Source: Podarcis erhardii
Lineage: Eukaryota
Direction: 5' to 3' (one strand)
Assembly (NCBI GenBank): GCA_964252035.1
Contig: OZ176201.1
Length of the DNA stretch: 64,000 nt
This document shows, piece by piece, positions 405 to 64,000 of the stretch (the first letter of the stretch is position 1; each line of letters begins with the position of its first letter). Both the position numbers and the translations under genes were made by a program. The notes below the pieces were generated by a model that was not told where the DNA came from, made no database searches, and saw only the letters and a list, made by a program, of their open reading frames with translations.

Positions 405-1559
405 AATTGAATAGTAAAGCGCAGGGCAGCACACACACCAGCAACAAAGCATCCATTCAGAATTCCAATACAAATGCAGACTACTAATGACTATAACATG
501 TATATTTGAGGGATCATATTCCACCAACAAAGCAAGTTCTGCAGATCACCCTGTAGCATGATAGCTTTGTTTCACGTATCTGATACTGCCTGCTATGAAA
601 GGCCATGGTCCAATAAAACCAAGAAGGTACAATCCTATGTATGCTTACTTGGAAGTAAGCCACATCACATTCGGGGGTGAGGGGCACACTTCCAATTAAA
701 GACATATGGGATCAAGCTCCTCCAAGCTTATACATACTATTTTTTTTTTTAAATAAACCAAACATTTTAGCAATAAAAACGTAGCAATAATATAATGATG
801 GCCACACAGGCTTCCTTACTGTCAATTAAGCAGCTCGGTTTTTTACTTAGCAAAGCTGGAGCGTCCCTTAAGAAGAGAAACACGGACGCACTCACCCCAC
901 TCCCGGTTAAGCCCAAGACAAGCAACGCTAAGCCCCCTCCCCGAGAGTAACGGACCCGTCGTCACCCGCGGAGGGCGGCGGGGACGCGCCCAGGTCCAGG
1001 CCCTTCCTTTGCCCACCCAGCGCATCTCTGGGACTCGCCTGCAGCCGCTCCCTGCTCGCTCTCGCGCCTCCTCCCTCTTCCTCCTGTCAACCTCCTGCTT
1101 TAAAGCGGGTAGAGGAGCCGACAGAGAAGAGCGAAGCAGTCCCCCCCCCCCACGGCTTCCCCTCACCCGCTTAGCAAGCGCAAAGCCACTACAAACATGG
1201 CAGCGCCGCACGTCACGAACGTTGCCACTACTACGGAGAACGAGGAGGCGGAAGCCTTTGTTGCTAGGGCTCGCTTGGCGTCGCGCACGCGTGACGACAC
1301 CGCGCCCCGCCCGCCTAAAGGCGGTGCTAACGGGAAAGAGGGGCGGGGCTTTAACTTGAAGCCGCCTTCCTAGAGACGTGTCTGCTGCGGCGCCTTGGCA
1401 ATGACGCAAAGCGGTCGCATTTCTAACCTGTCCGCGTTGCTGCGGCAACGCGATAGCTAGCGTTCTGATTGGCCGACAAGCACCGCCGCTCTCGGCCGCC
1501 ATTGGATGCTTAGGATGCTTGGACACGTCCGGCGCACTGATTGGTCGACCGGTTCGGAA

Positions 1560-1634
1560 GGGAGTTTTTACGGAGATGTCGTGGTGGCTGGTTCTGTCGG
1601 CTGTAGGCGGAGTGGCACCTCCGGGCCGGGTCAG
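1560..1634 (+). other. GMPPB: Putative non-coding first exon of GMPPB (5' end approximate)
   Basis: Consensus donor CAG|GTGAGT at 1634/1635. Matching pyrimidine-rich acceptor ctttcag at 1894-1900, six nt before the ATG. Confidence 0.65.
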
Positions 1635-1906
1635 GTGAGTTACGCGGTGCTGAGTGCGGAGGGGTGACGTTGGCTACGACTACGGGCTTCTGGGTCCGGT
1701 CCTGAAGAGCACCGAGGGCTCCAGGGGCGGCGGCGGCGGCGGCCGGGCTCTGAGCTCGAGGGGCTGCCGGCAAGTCCTGCTTGGTGGACGCGGGGAGGTT
1801 GGGACACCATCGAGGGGGACCTGGCAGGCAGCGGGGCCGGTAGAGGCCTTGGGGGCGGCGTGGGGTCTGACGCTTCGCCCTTTCCTCCGCCCTCTTTCAG
1901 GCAAGG

Positions 1907-2035
1907 ATGAAGGCGCTGATCTTGGTGGGGGGCTATGGCACGCGGCTGCGGCCCCTGACCCTCAGCATCCCGAAGCCCCTGGTGGAATTTTGCAACAAGC
2001 CTATCCTGCTGCATCAGGTGGAGGCTCTGGTGAAG
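1907..2035 (+). CDS. GMPPB: GMPPB coding exon 1 (mannose-1-phosphate guanylyltransferase beta): [20 protein letters not shown]...VEALVK
   Basis: ATG at 1907. Nucleotidyltransferase GGYGTRLRP motif. 129 nt; donor AAG|gtagg. Confidence 0.97.
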
Positions 2036-11747: not shown

Positions 11748-11847
11748 CTAGGAGGTGGCTGGCTTCATGTAATCATCCACACCCGTGATGGTGGCTTTGC
11801 AGAAGAAGCAGTCCTTGTTGTTCATCAGGTGCTGGTTGATGCAGGCT
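11748..11847 (-). CDS. RNF123: RNF123 last coding exon: [32 protein letters not shown]
   Basis: Second half of the RING, acceptor tttctag, TAG at 11748-11750. Confidence 0.96.
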
Positions 11848-12517
11848 CTAGAAAGACAAGAGCAGGAGGCCTTGGACATTTGTTCACAGCTACAGGCCGA
11901 GCTTTGGCCCAACAATACGTATCTAGTACCTAAAAGCCCCTTGCTGGGTCTAAATGAGTGCAAGTGTCCTGTGCATGCAAGATAATGCCCACTTTCCTCT
12001 TAAAATCAAATTCTACAGCTTCTCTATAAAACAAATTATACAAATTTGTTTTGGGGGCATGTGCTAAGCCATGGTAATGACTTAAGAGGAATGGGAGACA
12101 CTGAAGTCTTCCCCTGCCCCCAACCAGTTTGAATCCTGATCAGCCTTCCCCATGGTTTCTAAGATTTAAATACAAATGGCACACTTTATCAACCAAACTT
12201 TGCAGCCCAAAAGGTTAAAATGCTAGCTTTAAAAAACAAACAAATCAGTTGAATCTAATCTGCATGCGCAGTGCAGTCACAGCCTTGCATATGGGAGAGC
12301 TGGCCTAAGTAGCTATTCAGAAGCATCGTGCTGCTGTGTCTTTCCATTAGGGCAACAAGTGAAAAGGAGATTTCAGTTAGGAAGCTTCAGAGAGTTCAAA
12401 TGGCAAAATTCGTTAATTAAATCTCCAGTTATGGTCTGGGGCACCTTCTAGGACCCCTTCCATCCAACCAGAAAGCAAAAGTAGAGAAAAGCCCACATCC
12501 CCCAAGGGATTACTCAC

Positions 12518-21454: not shown

Positions 21455-21575
21455 TTTTTATTTATTTATTTAATTCATACACCACCCTTCATCATAGGAT
21501 CACAGGATGCTTTACAGCATAAACACACACATTTTTTTAAAAAACAAACAAACGAAAGAATAACCCCCCTCATCA
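21455..21575 (-). mobile_element. L2-like LINE 3' end
   Basis: (TTTA)n followed by ...ATACACCACCCTTCATC...TTTACAGCATAAA; resembles the copy at 42545. Confidence 0.5.
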
Positions 21576-24500
21576 CATTTGTTATCATCTTGTTCCCATA
21601 AACACCTGATCATGTTGAGAGTCCAGCTGCTGTAATGATTCAAGAGAGCTCTTATCTGCACTGACTACTAATTATGAATTTAAAGTAATGACTATGACAC
21701 CTTACTTACACTGGATCAGCTGTGATGTATTATTTCTCACTAATTAGTTGGGGTTTCTGCTACATTCTTGCAGCCATTTTGACTTACCAAATACATGTAG
21801 AATTGCAGCTTAATAATATAATCTTTTATCAAAATGACCATTCACAACTTTTAATTACTTCCTCCTACTCTTTCCATTCAAAGAAGATTAAATATGGTAA
21901 GAACTGCCTTAACAGGTGAACACAATAGTTGGATTAAGAAGTCTTACAGACTACTTAAACCCTCAGATTTCATGATGGTACACGAAATGATATGTTCATG
22001 ATGGAACATATCATTTGCAATAGGAGTTATGTTTCTGCCAGTTTTTTACATAAACACACACACACTCACAAAGGTTAATTTCTTGTTATTAGCTTTTTTG
22101 TTCTTTGTTTGTCTTCTTGTTATTATAGATTTGTATTATTACAATAAGAATTTAATAAAAATTACTTGTTAAAAAGCTCAATTTTTCATGTTCCCTAACT
22201 GAAAGCCAACCTTTGTTCATCACAAAGCATTAGAAGATATGTCTCATTACTTGTAGCTCCCACAATCAGCAAATGAAGCAGTCACAACAAGACAAGCAGG
22301 CTAATAGTACAAAGAACTGGAGAGATGAAATTTATGGGAAGTATTATGCAGCCCTACACAGAACTATTACAACAGCTACCAACGTCATAAGAGTGAAATG
22401 TGAGAACATAAAGTGGAATCTCAAAAGATTAAAATCAGAAGGCACAATTGCCCTCCTCACATAAAGGGAGATGGTGCTGTGTTCCCCTAGCCCTGCCCCT
22501 GATGTTGCTATACCTCTGACACTTGCACACTGAGTGGGATTCTGCAAAGGAACAGCTATGCATGTACATGGAAAGGCACTTTATGTGAGGACACCTCGAC
22601 CATGCAGGGGTCCTTGTCATCTCAATTGTCTATTTGCATACAATTGTACAATACCCTTTTCTGGTGTCCCACTCAATGCCCAGATTTCAGATATGCAGCA
22701 AAAGTCCTGGCCCTGCCTTTCTCCTGCCCTCCATTTTTAGTGAATGTGTACGGTTCAATGCTAAGCCCATGGCAGCCAGAAGCAGAATGGGCAGCATTTC
22801 CTGGTAATCCAGTATAAACTCTTGGAGCTATTGTGATAATCTGAAAGCATGAACTGTGCTAGCACTGTACAGAGAAACACACCGGGCCCTTCCTACCCTC
22901 AACATACCAAATAGCAGAATTAAAGTCACATCATTTCCTGAAGACCACTGATTTGAAATTGAGGTTTACGGGACACTGCGCTGAGGTACTTTAGGAGTGG
23001 TTCACACTCTTGTCTCTCTAACTGCTACTCCCTTGTCTCGCTTTCTCTTTATCCACATCTCCCTCTTCCCCCATTTTCCTCCTTCCTTGTCCTATGTGGA
23101 CCTGGGGCTGCTGGTTGCCCCGTCTGCTCTGTGGGTCACTGTTGGACCACCTCAGAATACAGGGATTGGTTACAGATTCAAAGCAGCACTTTCCGTCCTT
23201 GTAAGAAGAAGTGAGCCTGCTTCCTGGGATGCAGCCAGTGCATTTCCAAGGAACATGCATTTGTTTCTACTGTACACTTAACTTTATGGCTGTGCAAAGC
23301 TGCCAGTGGGGACTACTGCTGTCTGGCACTCCTTTCCTCCAAGGAAGACTAAGTCAACATTCAGAAAGGGCCTTTGTGAGTGGTTTGTCAAGGGCCGGAT
23401 GATCCAGACTGCTCAGCAATGCAGCACTTGGGTGTAGAGAAGCAGGGGACCGAATTGCTTTAGAGCACTATTAGCTTTCCTACTCATAAAGTGAGGAAGG
23501 ACGTCCCCTTGCCGAGAAAGGAATTAACACACAGTCAGGGTGCTGCCAAAACACCACTCATTTGAAGACATATGTAAGTCTCTTACCAATACCAGGGAGA
23601 GCAGCCAGAGCACTTTGAACTGAACTGTTTCAAGAGACAGGCCTCCTGCTTCATTCAACCTGTGGGGCCCACAATGGTGCCATAACTGTCCTGAGGACTC
23701 TGCCGTGAGATGGAGAGGTTGCTCACCTGGAAAGGAGGCTGCACATGCTGTGGAGAAAGGGGCTTCAGGTGACCTTCTCTAGGAGAGTGTTCAGGATTTG
23801 TGTTTGTTATAGGGAAATCAGCAAAAACAAAGTGGTCCTGTAAAAGACTGTATGTGGCATGTCTACTGCCACATACATGTATGATACAATACCAAAGTGC
23901 AAATCCAGACATAGGCAATTGCAAAGACCTCAAAGAAATGGATGGTTGAGCTAACCCAATGTTTTGTGTTGAATTTTGACTATTTCTACTGAGGAATCTT
24001 ATATCGTTCCAGAAAACATCTGATGCTTTAATGGTCGTGTTGTATTTTGCTAATGGGTTTTGTGTTGTCTTCTCCAGCTGCTGAGACTGAAAAGCTTTGC
24101 ATAGCTTGAAAAAAATTGTGAGAGTCAAGTCCCATTTAAGCATGTTAGGCCTAATGGAATTACAACCCACAGATCACTTCCTGATGGCTAAAACTAATTT
24201 GATATTAATTGAATTACTCTTCCTGCTCAGCCTGCCACATAGCAGTGACCTAGCTCTCACTGAAGTGGTAAACATGTGTCTCACTTGTACCAGTTCACAG
24301 TGCATTTGGAGGCTCACATGGTGGGATGCTCCCCTACACATAGAAAATGAGCATGCCAGAGAGAAGAGAAGACCAGAGGCCTTCTTCCTGACATGCTAGT
24401 TTTCTAGGTGAAGGGATATTTTTTTTCATGAACAAAGGAAAATTCAATCACATGAATCCCCACTTGCTCTCAGAGAGAACTGGATATTTTTGTTCAATTT

Positions 24501-59302: not shown

Positions 59303-59673
59303 TGTCAGTAGTGCCATTGTTGCTGATTTTTCATAAGTACAGCTCAAAAACAGAAACTTCTGTCCAGATTTTCACTGTGTGAAATATTGCAAGCATAGTT
59401 TACTACAATTACAGGACTAGTAAGCAGGACAGGATATAAAGACAAATGTCAAACCCAAAAATAATAATTGAATTTTGCAATGATTTGAGGTGTTAAAAAC
59501 ATTAGAAACAGACACCCTTACTATTCAAGAAGTATCAAGTAGAAATAAAATTTAAAAAACAGCAAGCATGAGCTTAATTTTCTTTCCCCCAATCACATAT
59601 GCATGTGTGCACGCATGCACACACATAACACCTACAGCCCAACATGACCTTTGGAAAACAGGAGCGGCCTTAC

Positions 59674-59748
59674 CAGTTCCCACAATCCTTGAGTCAGCAA
59701 AGTGCTTGGCTAAAATGGCAGCGAGGTGAGTCAAAGTCTCTTCGTAGC
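59674..59748 (-). CDS. RNF123: RNF123 exon: [24 protein letters not shown]
   Basis: 75 nt, AG/GT flanks. Confidence 0.96.
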
Positions 59749-59822
59749 CTGAAAAGAAAAAGTTCAGAATATCAGGATGCAGGGGAAAAACCCCCACAGC
59801 TATAGGATATAGCAGCTGCAGC

Positions 59823-61195
59823 CAGCGGCGTAGCGTGGGTTGTCAGCACCCGGGGCAAGGCAAGTAATTTGCGCCCCACGCCGTGGTGCCCCCCCACCAA
59901 GCCTCTATATTCTGCGCTTGTGAGGCTTGGCTGCTGGCCCTCCGTGGCCTGGCAACAGACTCAAGAGACCGGCCGTGGTGGCGCTGGAGGGCTGGTCTGG
60001 GGCCCGAGAGAAGCCTCGGAGAGTTCTCGCTAGGTTGACCTCGCAGCCTGGGCTACCCTGCGGGGCTGTTGTGAAAGGCGAAGGCGAGCAGCAGCGTGGC
60101 TCGCAGCGGAGCAAAGGGCACAACCACAGCGCCGGGACGTGCCCTTTGCTTGTGCCCCTTTGCTGGGGAGGCTGAGAAGGGCGCCCCTTTGCTGCGCTCC
60201 CCCAGGAGGTCCCCCAGGAGCAGAGCCCGCTGCCTGCGCTGGCAAGGAGGATGAGCCCAGCTGGCAGGCCGGCCAGAGAGGAGCCTCGTGGGCAGTGAGT
60301 GGCTGGCTCCTTGCGGGCGCCGGTGGTGGCGGCGGCGGCAGCGCAACTCCCTCCGGCCGCGAGAGGCGGGCAGCAGCCGGGCCTCGGACCTGCGGCCAGG
60401 AGCGCTGCCTCTTCCTGCGCCCCGAGGGCTCCCCACGCCCAGCAACCCGGGGAAAGCGCCGCACCACCTGTGGGTCCGCCGCCTCGCATCCGCTCGCCTT
60501 AGTTGCCGGGCGAGGCAAGCGCTCCTGCCTCGCATCCGCGGGGGGTTCGCGGCCAGGCCGGCCGGCCTGCGACTAGCCAGGCCCTGGGGCGGGGGGCGCT
60601 CCCTGCTTCCACCACTGGCCCCTGAACCCCAAGGCTGAGGCTCATGGCGCGCACCCCGGCTTGCAGCTCCTCCACCGCCCTTCCAATGGGGCAGCGACGT
60701 GCAGGCGCGCTCTCTGTCCCCAGCCGAAGCCGAGGGCGGCTTCTGGTAGCCCCGGGGCAGGCGGCGGAGGGGGGTCGCTGGCTGCAGCCGCCTCGCCTCG
60801 CCTCCGTTCTCCTCTCGAATCAGACACAGACAGCTGCTGACAGCGAGAAGAAGGGGCGGGGGCGGAGAAGTGCGACGTGGGCAGCGGGAGGCGGCTGGGG
60901 GGGGCTCGCAAGAGAAGCGCGCCCCGCGGGACTGAACCAGGTGCCTCTCCTCGGCTCCCGCAAGGTGACGTGCCCGTCTTGTGCTCTCCGCAAAAGGCGC
61001 CAGATCAAAGCGGCGAACGGTACAGATCCACGCCACGCCCCCCGTGGAACAGTTGTGCCCCCCACATCACAGGCAGCTCAGAGTTAAACTCTGCGCCCGA
61101 GGCTCTTCGGCGACTCCGGAGGCGGCGAGTGCGCCCCCCCAGATGTTGCGCCCGGTGCGGCCGGCCCCCCCTGCACCCCCCACGCTACGCCACTG
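59823..61195. mobile_element. Non-autonomous hAT-type element, 1373 bp, with CpG-island-like cargo
   Basis: TIRs CAGCGGCGTAGCGTGGG (59823-59839) and revcomp CAGTGGCGTAGCGTGGG (61179-61195), 16/17 identical. Perfect 8 bp TSD GCTGCAGC at 59815-59822 and 61196-61203. GC and CpG content drop abruptly outside the TIRs. Confidence 0.92.
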
Positions 61196-62772
61196 GCTGC
61201 AGCAGAATGAATTTCTAGAATGAGCTTTCAGATTCACAGAGAGAAAACACGGTCCAAGTATGGAGGAAGGGCTACCACTTGTCTGAGTCTCTAGCAGGCA
61301 AGTCAGGAATCAAGCTTAAAGTTTAAGAGAATGAAGGCAGGAAGTCTGCACAGCAGCATTTGGTGTTGCCAACTTTACCTTACCACTTAACCAGAAGCAT
61401 CAGAAGTAAGTGGGAATGTCCATAGAAGTTCTTTTACACACCTGGTTAGAAAGCAGCCATGCAGGCTGTGGACTGGGTTCATCTCTTTGACTAGTATAGG
61501 CTTTCTGAGACATGCATATAATCAATACAGGAATAGCAGTTGTTGAATTTGATAAAATTAGCCTGGACACTTCCCTACAGTTAAGCAAATTCTTAGCAAT
61601 AATATACAGTAGTCCCTTTGTATAGGACTAATACCCGCATAACACAGCTAAAATAGGAATACTGAACTGTGTTATGGAGCAGCTTTGGGTAGACAGAAGA
61701 ATAAAGACTGGGGAAATTGTAGATGGGATGGGGGTTAAAAACCTATTCCCCAGTGCTGTAGCTCTGATCTAAAATCCACCACAAGCTTTTGACATTTGAG
61801 GTGGGCGGGGGGGAGAGTGGACAATCCAATCACAGATCTCCTGGTGTCATATCTGGTTTCATCCCCAAAATGAAAGAGATTGTGGCTCTCATAGAGTACC
61901 ACCTACAGAGAAAAACAATATGCTGAAATACAGTGCCTCACTTCCAAAAAGCTTGCAGCCAAAAAGAAGAGCTCTTGGCAGAGGAATTTCAGATGGAGGA
62001 GTTTGGAATAACTACGAAATAAGAAAATAGATCTTCCAAACCAGTTTTCATAATTACATCTCCAGGGCCAGACTGCACAACACCTGCTCTGACACAATGA
62101 CAGTATTTTCTCACCCTTCACAGTACTTCAAAAAGGAGGAAATGTATTTTGCATATATTTCCAAAACAACGTAACTGCAGGCTGAGGGAAGAAAACACAA
62201 CACAATCCAAAACCAGGGACAGCAAACAAGCATAACCACTGGAATTTGAGGAGGCAAAAAAATGATGTAAGCAGGAAGGCTTGATTTGTATGCTTTGCTT
62301 GAACAGTCCTTAATAGTCAATATGATGCAGTTGTCTAACATAATTATGCCATGCAGTTGCATAGTAAGAATGGCGATTTTCTACATGTTTTGCTCCTCTT
62401 GCCTTGCAAAATTGCTAAATGACTTTTAATGAAATTCTAAAAACTGTACACAAAGGTCCTTTATGACCGCAACTCTTCAAAAAGGGGATCAGTATAATTA
62501 CCAGGAGCTGCAGTGTTTCAGGGTAACATCACTCAGATAATGTATAAATACTAAAAAGTTATTAGGCATAAGGGTAGGCAGTCAGGCTTAATAGCATTTA
62601 ATCAACTTCAGGATGCAGGGGCAAACAATGCTTGTTATAGCTTGCACTAGGCATTATCAAGATGAGAAACCCGGGGACCCAGACTGAAGTTTTGTGTGTG
62701 TGGAGGGCAGGACAATTGTGTGAGCAAGTTAAACAGCACCTAATGTGATTAGAAAGTTGAGTACCACTCAAG

Positions 62773-62886
62773 AGTATCACCAACTTTTACTCAACAGTAG
62801 ACCTACTGAATTAATGAACATGACTAAGTTAGGTCTATAATTTCAATAAGTCTACTCTGAGTAAAGCTTGGTTGAATACTACCCCA
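62773..62886. mobile_element. Palindromic MITE-like element
   Basis: Arms TTACTCAACAGTAGACCTACTGAA / TTCAATAAGTCTACTCTGAGTAA. Confidence 0.55.
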
Positions 62887-63092
62887 CAACACAGCCAACA
62901 TATTTTCAAAACACATCTTTACAACCACTAGGGCACGTTAAGCTAAGGTTCTTTGCAACCCAAATTCTGTGCAGCATGCAATATTCTGTGTGGAGTTCTT
63001 ATCCCTTTTCTCTTGCGCATTGACTTCTATACACAAAATTACAGATGGTCCTGCTCAGAGGCCCTCTCCGGTTCCCTCCTTCTCCTCCTCAC

Positions 63093-63270
63093 CTGGAAGC
63101 TCTTCCATGCTGTTGACAGGACTGAAGTAGTTCTTGAGAGCACTGTAGCTATTCATAGCCACACTCAGATAAAATTCTGGCATAAAAGCAAAGAGCGAAC
63201 CAATCCTGTCTCCATGCTCAATAGTGCGGATGCATACCCGTAGCAGCCAGTATATATCTTGCATCTTCTC
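63093..63270 (-). CDS. RNF123: RNF123 exon: [20 protein letters not shown]...SMEELP
   Basis: 178 nt, AG/GT flanks. Confidence 0.96.
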
Positions 63271-63471: not shown

Positions 63472-63746
63472 GATCAGAGTAAATACTACTGAGGAAATGA
63501 AAGAAAAGGAGGTCAACAATTTTGTGCAAAAGCAGGAAAAATGCAGATGAATTTACTGCTAAAACCCAAGATTTTTCTGTAATAAAAATGAACTTTACCA
63601 GGATATATTAACAGAAGCACAACATATAAGACTTGGGAAGAAATGGTGCAGTTCCATTCAGCATTGGCCAGGCCAGAACTGGAATTTATGGCCCAAGCTT
63701 AAGTGAGGCACCTCACTGATATTATGTGTACTACTTTCCTTCTCAC

Positions 63747-63854
63747 CTTTGAATAAATGGTAACGTTGATCCAAGCAAGTCGGCGACTCAGGTGATTAAG
63801 TTTCTCTGAGAAAACCTTCTGACTTTTCACCAGTTCATCGTGGATGTCTCTTCT
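63747..63854 (-). CDS. RNF123: RNF123 exon: [36 protein letters not shown] (gene continues beyond the window)
   Basis: 108 nt. The 14 exons sum to 1536 nt = 511 aa plus stop with all phases consistent. Confidence 0.94.
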
Positions 63855-64000
63855 CTGAATTGGACACGGGGGGGGGGGATGAAGAGCAATGGTGCATATG
63901 TTTTCCTGCTTTCAGAAGCATGTACACAGCAAGTCCAGTACTTCACAAAAGCCTTACCACAATCACAGGATGTTCTTCTAATGTGGAGGAAAAGCATGAG

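What the first reader, a model, noticed from the sequence alone, without database searches (positions are those of the whole stretch)
59815..61203. A whole CpG island packaged inside a hAT transposon: candidate Pack-type element mobilising promoter-like DNA in a reptile
Seen: the only intragenic CpG island in the window starts and stops exactly at 17 bp TIRs (16/17 identical) and is flanked by a perfect 8 bp TSD (GCTGCAGC). No transposase similarity is visible in any listed ORF. About 1.2 kb of the interior looks like host promoter/first-exon DNA. Known: an 8 bp TSD with CAG...CTG ends indicates the hAT superfamily (CAGTGGCG ends resemble Tip100-type elements). Gene-fragment capture by TIR elements, biased to GC-rich 5' ends, is well known for plant Pack-MULEs and much less characterised in vertebrates. 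Inference: this is a young transduplicating element (intact TSD, undecayed CpGs) from a family that may scatter ready-made CpG islands through the genome. A gene or CGI annotator would miscall it as an RNF123 internal promoter.
Basis: partly seen in the sequence, partly recalled or inferred. Interest (0 to 1): 0.88.

Follow-up and report, generated by a model that had tools for sequence, protein, structure and literature searches.

The report
GC-rich hAT transposon posing as CpG island
The only CpG island inside this stretch of the RNF123 gene is a 1.37-kb non-autonomous hAT transposon that inserted in this lineage, but whether its GC-rich interior is captured host promoter DNA could not be tested.

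Summary
A 17-nt inverted repeat (16/17) lies at 59823-59839 and 61179-61195. It is flanked by a perfect 8-bp duplication, GCTGCAGC, and encloses 1,373 bp at 71% GC with CpG o/e 0.74. The rest of the window has 44% GC and CpG o/e 0.20.

It is a true insertion. In two other species the DNA on either side of the element is contiguous in the same RNF123 intron, with one target-like octamer. Neither these two nor a third, more distant species has a CpG island there.

A scan of public metagenome contigs found about 30 eukaryote-like contigs with the same TIR plus 40-60 nt of subterminal sequence. Many are complete 145-260-bp MITEs with 8-bp TSDs, made only of a left-type and a right-type end. The window element therefore looks like such a frame with about 1.2 kb of extra GC-rich DNA between the ends. 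That DNA has no transposase or other protein similarity.

The specific claim was not testable, because no vertebrate genome could be searched by DNA. That claim is that the filler is a captured host CpG island or first exon and that the family scatters such islands. Other first-stage notes report similar elements in this genome, but none has been checked.

Verdict: a real, fairly young hAT element. The Pack-type reading is plausible but unproven. Pack-TIRs in animals are already published.

The parts
59815..59822 (.). Target-site duplication, left copy (GCTGCAGC)
   Evidence: A single related octamer sits at the empty site in L005 and L007.
59823..59839 (+). Left terminal inverted repeat, CAGCGGCGTAGCGTGGG
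   Evidence: The same 17-mer ends about 30 eukaryote-like metagenome elements.
59840..59887 (+). Left subterminal region shared with the family (TTGTCAGC..CCCGGGGC..GCAAGTA..TTGCGCCCC)
   Evidence: A profile built only from metagenome copies matches 59823-59882 at 42 bits (E 4e-12), against 9.6 bits for the TIR alone. Alignment A2.
59888..61130 (.). Interior of about 1.2 kb, GC 0.65-0.79 and CpG-rich, origin unknown (candidate cargo)
   Evidence: No match to any family relative, to the rest of the window or to the fetched orthologous loci. No protein, Pfam or PDB similarity. No tandem array, tRNA or Rfam family.
60776..60788 (-). Internal 13-mer identical to the left junction (TSD plus the first 5 nt of the TIR), in inverted orientation
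   Evidence: pair I6; P about 0.002-0.007 by resampling. Unexplained.
61131..61178 (-). Right subterminal region, G-rich on the inward-reading strand, family 'right-type' end
   Evidence: A profile built from metagenome copies only matches 61195-61146 at 21.7 bits (E 9e-6), with high compositional bias. Alignment A3.
61179..61195 (-). Right terminal inverted repeat (reverse complement CAGTGGCGTAGCGTGGG)
61196..61203 (.). Target-site duplication, right copy (GCTGCAGC)
59674..59748 (-). RNF123 exon ([25 protein letters not shown]); its 3' splice site lies 74 nt from the element
63093..63270 (-). Preceding RNF123 exon. The host intron is 59749-63092 (3,344 nt, of which 1,381 are the insertion plus the second TSD copy).
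   Evidence: (a hit named RNF123). Pfam TPR_RNF123 on the neighbouring ORF of L002.

Best explanation
A non-autonomous hAT-superfamily transposon of 1,373 bp inserted into an RNF123 intron in this lineage and duplicated the target GCTGCAGC.

Its outer 50-65 nt on each side (TIR included) belong to a widespread hAT lineage. The smallest members of that lineage are about 150-bp MITEs made of just these two unlike ends. Between the ends this copy carries about 1.2 kb of GC- and CpG-rich non-coding DNA that is not part of the family frame.

The 'CpG island' is simply this GC-rich, still little-decayed transposon. It is not an ancestral RNF123 promoter.

Shown here: the insertion, the hAT hallmarks, the family ends, the absence of a transposase, and the absence of the island in other species.

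Inferred: a transposase supplied in trans moved it by cut-and-paste, and the filler was added to a MITE-like frame by repair synthesis at some earlier step.
For: - TIR and TSD are exact and far beyond chance.
- Empty site: the two flanks are contiguous in L005 and L007, with one octamer (GAAGCAGC, ATTGCACT) at the site.
- The orthologous introns of L002/L003, L005 and L007 have CpG o/e 0.08-0.27 and no island.
- The ends fit the hAT rule YARNG, with an 8-bp TSD.
- 13 complete relatives in metagenome contigs (10 distinct insertions; some are the same site in two assemblies) also have 8-bp TSDs. Seven are perfect, five are 7/8 and one is 5/8.
- Subterminal homology reaches beyond the searched 20-mer: 42 bits on the left and 21.7 bits on the right.
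- MITE relatives of 145-260 bp consist of one left-type and one right-type end.
- The 1,657-bp relative L047 has GC-rich ends but an AT-rich interior, so GC-rich filler is not a trait of the family.
- The interior has no transposase or other domain.
- The TIR motif CGTGG is repeated, pointing inward, 6 times in the outer 280 nt against 0.8 expected. The motif was chosen post hoc.
Against: - No second copy from this genome could be examined, so the size of the family-specific part within this species is inferred from distant relatives only.
- The right-end homology is weak and compositionally biased.
- No autonomous partner was found in any fetched locus.
- The species with empty sites are distant (about 85% identity in exons), so the date of insertion is only loosely bounded.
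Confidence: 0.85

Rival explanations
1. Pack-type hAT. The 1.2-kb filler is a host CpG island or gene 5' end that was copied into a MITE-like frame. It then transposed with the frame, and the family spreads such islands around the genome.
For: - The architecture is frame plus unrelated filler.
- No transposase remnant.
- The filler has promoter-like content: GC boxes at 60586, 60734, 60853 and 60860, a CCAAT at 60683, and an ATG at 60251 followed by a consensus splice donor at 60295.
- Pack-TIRs, mostly hAT, are documented in animals (PMC8277862).
- Anolis non-autonomous elements incorporate extraneous DNA (PMC3014272).
- About 15 unchecked first-stage notes describe similar 'loaded' hAT elements in this genome, two of them naming SPR and ATP1B3 5' ends.
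Against: - No parental locus was found.
- No reading frame of the filler resembles any protein.
- GC and CpG richness also covers the family ends, so it is not a mark of cargo.
- The TpG/CpA excess shows CpG decay, unlike the genuine island at 801-1950.
- The scan notes come from the same kind of reader and are unverified.
Confidence: 0.35
2. Ordinary non-autonomous family with a fixed interior. All copies of this subfamily in the lizard share the same 1.2-kb GC-rich interior. Its origin is old or unknown, and nothing is being captured now.
For: - Most non-autonomous hAT families behave like this, including the 'orphan' Anolis families that share only TIRs with any autonomous element (PMC3014272).
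- The inward-pointing CGTGG repeats reach about 275 nt from the left end, beyond the part shared with distant relatives. This suggests more of the element is transposon-specific.
- There is no sign of a host gene in the interior.
Against: - The smallest family members elsewhere need only about 150 bp, and interiors differ among all relatives seen.
- First-stage notes claim the same ends with different interiors in this genome, but this is unverified.
Confidence: 0.4
3. Filled in place. A short MITE of this family inserted here first, and the GC-rich DNA was later copied into it by double-strand-break repair at this site. This is the transposition-independent origin proposed for most animal Pack-TIRs. 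On this reading the island was never mobile.
For: - PMC8277862 reports that most single-copy animal Pack-TIRs arise this way.
- The TSD and TIRs would stay intact.
- The internal 13-mer copies this site's own TSD plus 5 nt of the TIR (60776-60788, P about 0.002-0.007). That would be easiest to explain by a rearrangement after insertion.
Against: - There is no direct evidence.
- The 13-mer may be chance in GC-rich, CAG/CTG-like sequence.
- The scan notes suggest many loaded copies, which fits transposition better.
Confidence: 0.1
4. A genuine, ancestral internal promoter or CpG island of RNF123 that happens to be bounded by a chance inverted repeat.
For: It meets the formal CpG-island criteria.
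Against: - It is absent from the same intron in three other species (four Logan contigs, one a near-duplicate), whose flanks join across the site in two of them.
- The TIR-plus-TSD structure is not reached in resamplings.
- The ends are homologous to transposon ends from other organisms.
Confidence: 0.01

Closest known systems
Pack-TIR / Pack-hAT elements of animals (Tan et al. 2021, Nat Commun, PMC8277862)
   Same: A hAT TIR frame with an 8-bp TSD, no transposase, and an interior that is not transposon sequence. Of the 370 animal Pack-TIRs reported, 208 are hAT-associated. One multicopy frog case carries a 5' UTR fragment.
   Different: Those were defined by a demonstrable parental gene copy, and none could be found here. 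Most are single-copy and were ascribed to gap filling in place. No lizard appears in the text searched.
Pack-MULEs of plants (for example rice; PMC5861414)
   Same: Non-autonomous TIR elements that carry GC-rich gene 5' fragments and change local base composition.
   Different: A different superfamily (Mutator, 9-10-bp TSD, long TIRs) in plants, with cargo shown to be genic. Here the cargo's origin is unknown.
Non-autonomous 'orphan' hAT families of Anolis carolinensis, hAT-N4 and hAT-N6 to N8_AC (Novick et al. 2011, PMC3014272)
   Same: Young lizard hAT elements that share only TIRs with any autonomous element and contain extraneous DNA. The TSD pattern NNTNNANN given for hAT-N7 and N8 fits GCTGCAGC.
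   Different: None of the TIRs in that paper's Table 1 matches CAGYGGCGTAGCGTGGG. GC-rich or CpG-island-like interiors are not described there.
MITEs with the same ends in JGI metagenome contigs
   Same: An identical 17-nt TIR, homologous subterminal parts with the same left/right polarity, 8-bp TSDs, and GC- and CpG-rich ends.
   Different: They are 145-260 bp with no filler. The host organisms are unidentified but eukaryote-like (one contig carries a metazoan-type IQSEC PH-domain exon), and only the ends are similar.
CpG islands made by young GC-rich repeats (for example Alu, SVA and LTRs in mammals; general knowledge)
   Same: A transposon meets the algorithmic CpG-island criteria because its CpGs have not yet decayed. 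This is why island callers mask repeats first.
   Different: Those are retroelements. A 1.4-kb DNA transposon at 71% GC is less usual.

Membership tests
hAT superfamily (non-autonomous member) | 8-bp target-site duplication | tested here: met
   GCTGCAGC on both sides. A single octamer sits at the empty site in L005 and L007. Relatives with the same ends also have 8-bp TSDs.
hAT superfamily (non-autonomous member) | Short TIRs (about 10-25 nt) beginning with YARNG | tested here: met
   17-nt TIRs, 16/17, beginning CAGCG and CAGTG. The YARNG rule itself is from general knowledge.
hAT superfamily (non-autonomous member) | TSD consensus nTnnnnAn | tested here: not met
   GCTGCAGC has C at position 2 and G at position 7. 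It does fit NNTNNANN, reported for Anolis hAT-N7 and N8 (PMC3014272). This is a preference, not a strict rule.
hAT superfamily (non-autonomous member) | Mobilised by a hAT transposase (BED finger, RNase-H-like core, hAT dimerisation domain) with matching TIRs | not testable with these tools
   No transposase was found in the element or in any fetched relative. No vertebrate genome could be searched.
hAT-Tip100 subgroup | Transposase groups with Tip100/Zaphod in a phylogeny | not testable with these tools
No autonomous copy is available.
Pack-type (transduplicating) TIR element | TIRs and TSD, with no transposase | tested here: met
Pack-type (transduplicating) TIR element | Interior homologous to a host gene or other non-transposon parental locus | tested here: inconclusive
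   No protein relatives of the longest frame. No Pfam or credible PDB match. No match in the window or fetched loci. A DNA search of the host genome was not possible.
Pack-type (transduplicating) TIR element | Family frame exists without the cargo, or with other cargo | tested here: inconclusive
   Frames without cargo exist, but in other organisms. The interiors of all relatives differ. Copies from this genome were not obtainable, and the first-stage notes are unverified.
CpG island (sequence criteria) | Over 500 bp, GC at least 0.55, CpG o/e at least 0.65 | tested here: met
   1,373 bp, GC 0.709, o/e 0.74.
Functional promoter or unmethylated island | Germline hypomethylation, transcription start sites, conservation | tested here: not met
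   Only conservation could be tested, and it fails. The TpG/CpA excess suggests some methylation-driven decay. Methylation and CAGE data are not available.

The most novel reading that the evidence does not exclude
This lizard may harbour active hAT lineages, this TIR family among them. Their 150-bp MITE-like frames would repeatedly pick up CpG islands or gene 5' ends and re-insert them in introns. That would seed the genome with ready-made, promoter-like islands on a scale not described for any vertebrate.
Probability: 0.25. Interest if true: 0.75.

Novelty: new member of a known kind. Interest (0 to 1): 0.42.

Why it matters
For annotation, an intragenic 'CpG island' here is a transposon, so island and promoter callers need repeat-aware handling in this genome.

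For biology, it adds a well-bounded example with both ends, a TSD, empty sites and family ends recognisable across organisms. It shows a MITE-like hAT frame carrying a kilobase of GC-rich foreign DNA in a vertebrate.

If a genome-wide search confirms many such copies with different host-derived fillers, it would be a vertebrate counterpart of plant Pack-MULEs. It would also be a route for spreading promoter-like DNA.

On the evidence available for this one locus, it is a solid but fairly ordinary non-autonomous transposon.

Tried and rejected
- **Protein search of the 327-aa interior frame:** no hit.
- **Pfam on the ten longest frames:** nothing at E <= 0.01; one listing at E 0.49 is noise.
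- **PDB sequence search of four frames:** one 19.9-bit match to a mycobacterial short-chain dehydrogenase. On inspection it is a composition artefact.
- **Rfam, tRNA and tandem-repeat scans of the element:** nothing relevant.
- **Other copies in the window:** BLASTN, a TIR search with 3 mismatches and nhmmer profiles of both ends found none. The fetched orthologous loci had none either.
- **Exact look-up of three window ORFs in the protein collection:** absent, so this species' own reads or assembly could not be reached through ORFs.
- **Literature:** no paper holds the 12-nt TIR strings in a transposon context, and the hits to the 10-mer are primers and the like. No Anolis family has this TIR. 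Nothing was found on hAT-borne CpG islands in lizards.
- **Viral contigs:** six hits to the 17-mer, all chance matches in phage genes.
- **Metagenome hits:** about ten of the 43 are chance matches in GC-rich prokaryote contigs.
- **Autonomous partner:** no transposase in any metagenome locus.
- **Other TIR-plus-TSD candidates in the window** (21523-22063 and others, 5 mismatches): low-complexity chance matches.
- **The search of earlier findings by sequence:** blank.
Full report
**1.

Reading 59600-61450 and the repeat finder give the following.
- An 8-bp direct repeat, GCTGCAGC, at 59815-59822 and 61196-61203.
- Directly inside it, a 17-nt inverted repeat: left CAGCGGCGTAGCGTGGG, and right, reverse-complemented, CAGTGGCGTAGCGTGGG. 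They agree at 16 of 17 positions.
- The one mismatch is a CpG/TpG difference.

The TIR pattern with up to 3 mismatches occurs nowhere else in the 64 kb; 0.11 matches were expected. I also scanned the whole window for any 8-bp direct repeat enclosing a 17-nt inverted repeat. That scan finds this structure alone at 1 mismatch or fewer. In 20 composition-preserving resamplings none had 2 mismatches or fewer.

The 1,373 bp between the TSD copies have GC 0.709 and CpG o/e 0.74. The rest of the window has 0.444 and 0.20. The only other island is at 801-1950.

**2. Setting**

The window carries the 3' two-thirds of RNF123 on the minus strand. Exon-like frames run from 63702-63911 down to about 11751-11999. 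Three results confirm the gene's identity:
- 105 hits to the exon at 63093-63270;
- a hit named RNF123 by NCBI;
- a TPR_RNF123 Pfam mark on a neighbouring ORF of an orthologous contig.

The element lies in the 3,344-nt intron 59749-63092. It starts 74 nt upstream, in gene sense, of the 3' splice site of the exon at 59674-59748. The island at 801-1950 lies beyond the last exon, so the element is indeed the only intragenic island in the window.

**3. It is an insertion, and the octamer is target DNA**

No vertebrate genome can be searched by DNA with these tools. The protein collections do, however, hold ORFs called on Logan assemblies of vertebrate sequencing runs. I used the two exons that flank the intron as queries. 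This fetched orthologous contigs from three other species:
- L005/L006 (runs SRR12196012 and SRR12196015);
- L007 (SRR22184594);
- the more distant L002/L003.

When the element and one TSD copy are removed, the window aligns colinearly across the site with L005 and L007. A single octamer sits where the TSD is: GAAGCAGC in L005 and ATTGCACT in L007. This also settles an ambiguity. GCTGCAGC is a palindrome and could have been read as part of a 25-nt TIR.

The orthologous introns are 980-1,380 nt long, with CpG o/e 0.08-0.27 and no island. These species are distant, with about 85% identity in exons and introns alignable only near the splice site. The insertion is therefore dated only as later than those splits.

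**4. The ends belong to a widespread hAT lineage**

I scanned the JGI metagenome contigs for the 17-mer plus three degenerate bases. This gave 43 loci. About ten are chance matches in GC-rich prokaryote contigs. The other roughly 30 are eukaryote-like, with GC 0.39-0.51. One carries a metazoan-type IQSEC PH-domain exon and another a LINE reverse transcriptase. They share far more than the searched 20-mer.

*How far the homology reaches.* Profiles built only from the metagenome copies hit the window's left end over 59823-59882 at 42 bits. The TIR alone scores 9.6 bits. The right end is hit over 61195-61146 at 21.7 bits, with high G-rich bias (alignments A2 and A3).

*The two ends are unlike.* One is a left type (GGGTTGTC, then a GC-rich hairpin-like stretch, then TTGCGCCCC). 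The other is a G-rich right type. The window element has one of each.

*Bare frames exist.* Thirteen complete relatives, representing 10 distinct insertions because some contigs are re-assemblies of the same site, are 145-260-bp MITEs. They are made of just one end of each type. Their 8-bp TSDs are perfect in seven, 7/8 in five and 5/8 in one. They are GC-rich (0.54-0.67) and CpG-rich in AT-richer contigs, so GC-rich ends are a trait of the family.

*GC-rich filler is not a family trait.* One 1,657-bp relative (L047:4-1660) has GC-rich ends and an AT-rich interior. Among all relatives, similarity starting from the terminus runs no more than about 180 nt.

*No autonomous partner.* No locus contains a transposase.

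**5. The interior**

Positions 59888-61130 match nothing:
- not the family relatives;
- not the rest of the window, including the other island;
- not the fetched orthologous loci;
- no protein of the large collection, for the 327-aa frame;
- no Pfam family at E <= 0.01 for the ten longest frames;
- no credible PDB sequence (the single 19.9-bit hit is compositional);
- no Rfam family, tRNA or tandem array.

None of the six-frame translations looks like a real N-terminus.

Promoter-like items are present: GC boxes at 60586, 60734, 60853 and 60860, a CCAAT at 60683, and an ATG at 60251 followed 45 nt later by GTGAGT. Such items are expected in any 75%-GC sequence, so they carry little weight.

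Two points temper the 'pristine island' idea. First, GC and CpG richness extends through the TIRs and subterminal parts. Second, TpG (1.27) and CpA (1.13) are in excess compared with the genuine island at 801-1950 (0.90, 0.92). Together with the CpG/TpG mismatch in the TIR, this points to some methylation-type decay.

The TIR-derived pentamer CGTGG recurs, pointing inward, six times in the outer 280 nt against 0.8 expected. I picked this motif after seeing the data. If real, more of the left arm is transposon-specific than the 60 nt shared with distant relatives.

**6. An oddity**

At 60776-60788 the interior holds a 13-mer that is the exact reverse complement of the left junction: the TSD plus the first 5 nt of the TIR. 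The probability is about 0.002-0.007 by resampling. A TSD is specific to the insertion site. If this is not chance, it implies a rearrangement after insertion at this site. I could not take it further.

**7. What it most likely is**

The safe statement has confidence of about 0.85. A trans-mobilised, non-autonomous hAT element inserted here. It consists of a MITE-like frame of this family plus about 1.2 kb of GC-rich filler. The island is the transposon.

Three narrower accounts of the filler remain open:
- a fixed subfamily interior of old or unknown origin (about 0.40);
- filling in place of a resident MITE by break repair, the origin that Tan et al. propose for most animal Pack-TIRs (about 0.10; PMC8277862).

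The frame-plus-filler architecture and the lack of any transposase remnant favour 'acquired DNA'. Nothing here shows that it came from a host promoter.

**8. Earlier notes of this scan**

First-stage readers have flagged many similar 'hAT with CpG-island cargo' elements elsewhere in this genome. Their notes include claims of the same ends with different interiors, of paired empty and loaded copies, and of cargo recognised as the 5' ends of SPR and ATP1B3. None has been followed up, and I could not read their sequences. I treat them as raising the prior for the Pack reading, not as evidence.

**9. Comparison with what is known**

- Pack-TIRs in animals are published: 370 in 100 genomes, 208 of them hAT-associated, mostly single-copy (PMC8277862).
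- Lizard non-autonomous hAT families that share only TIRs with any autonomous element, and that take up extraneous DNA, are described for Anolis (PMC3014272). None of the TIRs listed there matches this one.
- Young GC-rich repeats that score as CpG islands are a familiar annotation problem.

This locus is therefore a new member of a known kind. The genome-wide version of the claim would be more notable, but it needs the genome search described under next steps.

Noticed in passing
window 60776-60788: A 13-mer inside the element is the exact reverse complement of the left junction (TSD plus the first 5 nt of the TIR). P is about 0.002-0.007 by resampling. It may be a trace of a rearrangement after insertion, or chance.
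   Followed up: partly
L008-L050 (JGI metagenome contigs): About 30 eukaryote-like contigs from a few metagenome projects carry elements with the identical 17-nt TIR and homologous subterminal parts. Many are 145-260-bp MITEs with 8-bp TSDs. The hosts are unidentified. Such close ends in a lizard and in probably unrelated eukaryotes (hosts unidentified) raise the question of horizontal transfer versus strong constraint on transposase-binding ends.
   Followed up: partly
window 801-1950: A second CpG island (GC 0.64, CpG o/e 0.92, no TpG/CpA excess) lies beyond the 3' end of RNF123. It looks like a genuine promoter island of a neighbouring gene and served here as the internal control for CpG decay.
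   Followed up: no
window 59823-59826 versus 61192-61195: The only TIR mismatch is CpG on the left and TpG on the right. It is consistent with deamination of a methylated CpG after insertion, which would make CAGCGG the ancestral end.
   Followed up: no
L051, L052, L054, L056 (IMG/VR contigs): The 17-mer also occurs in a conserved phage gene in several viral contigs, always with the same flank. These are chance matches unrelated to the transposon.
   Followed up: yes
window 59595-59623: A weak mir-297 Rfam match (23 bits against a gathering score of 90) falls on a (CA)n-like low-complexity stretch. It is not a real microRNA.
   Followed up: yes
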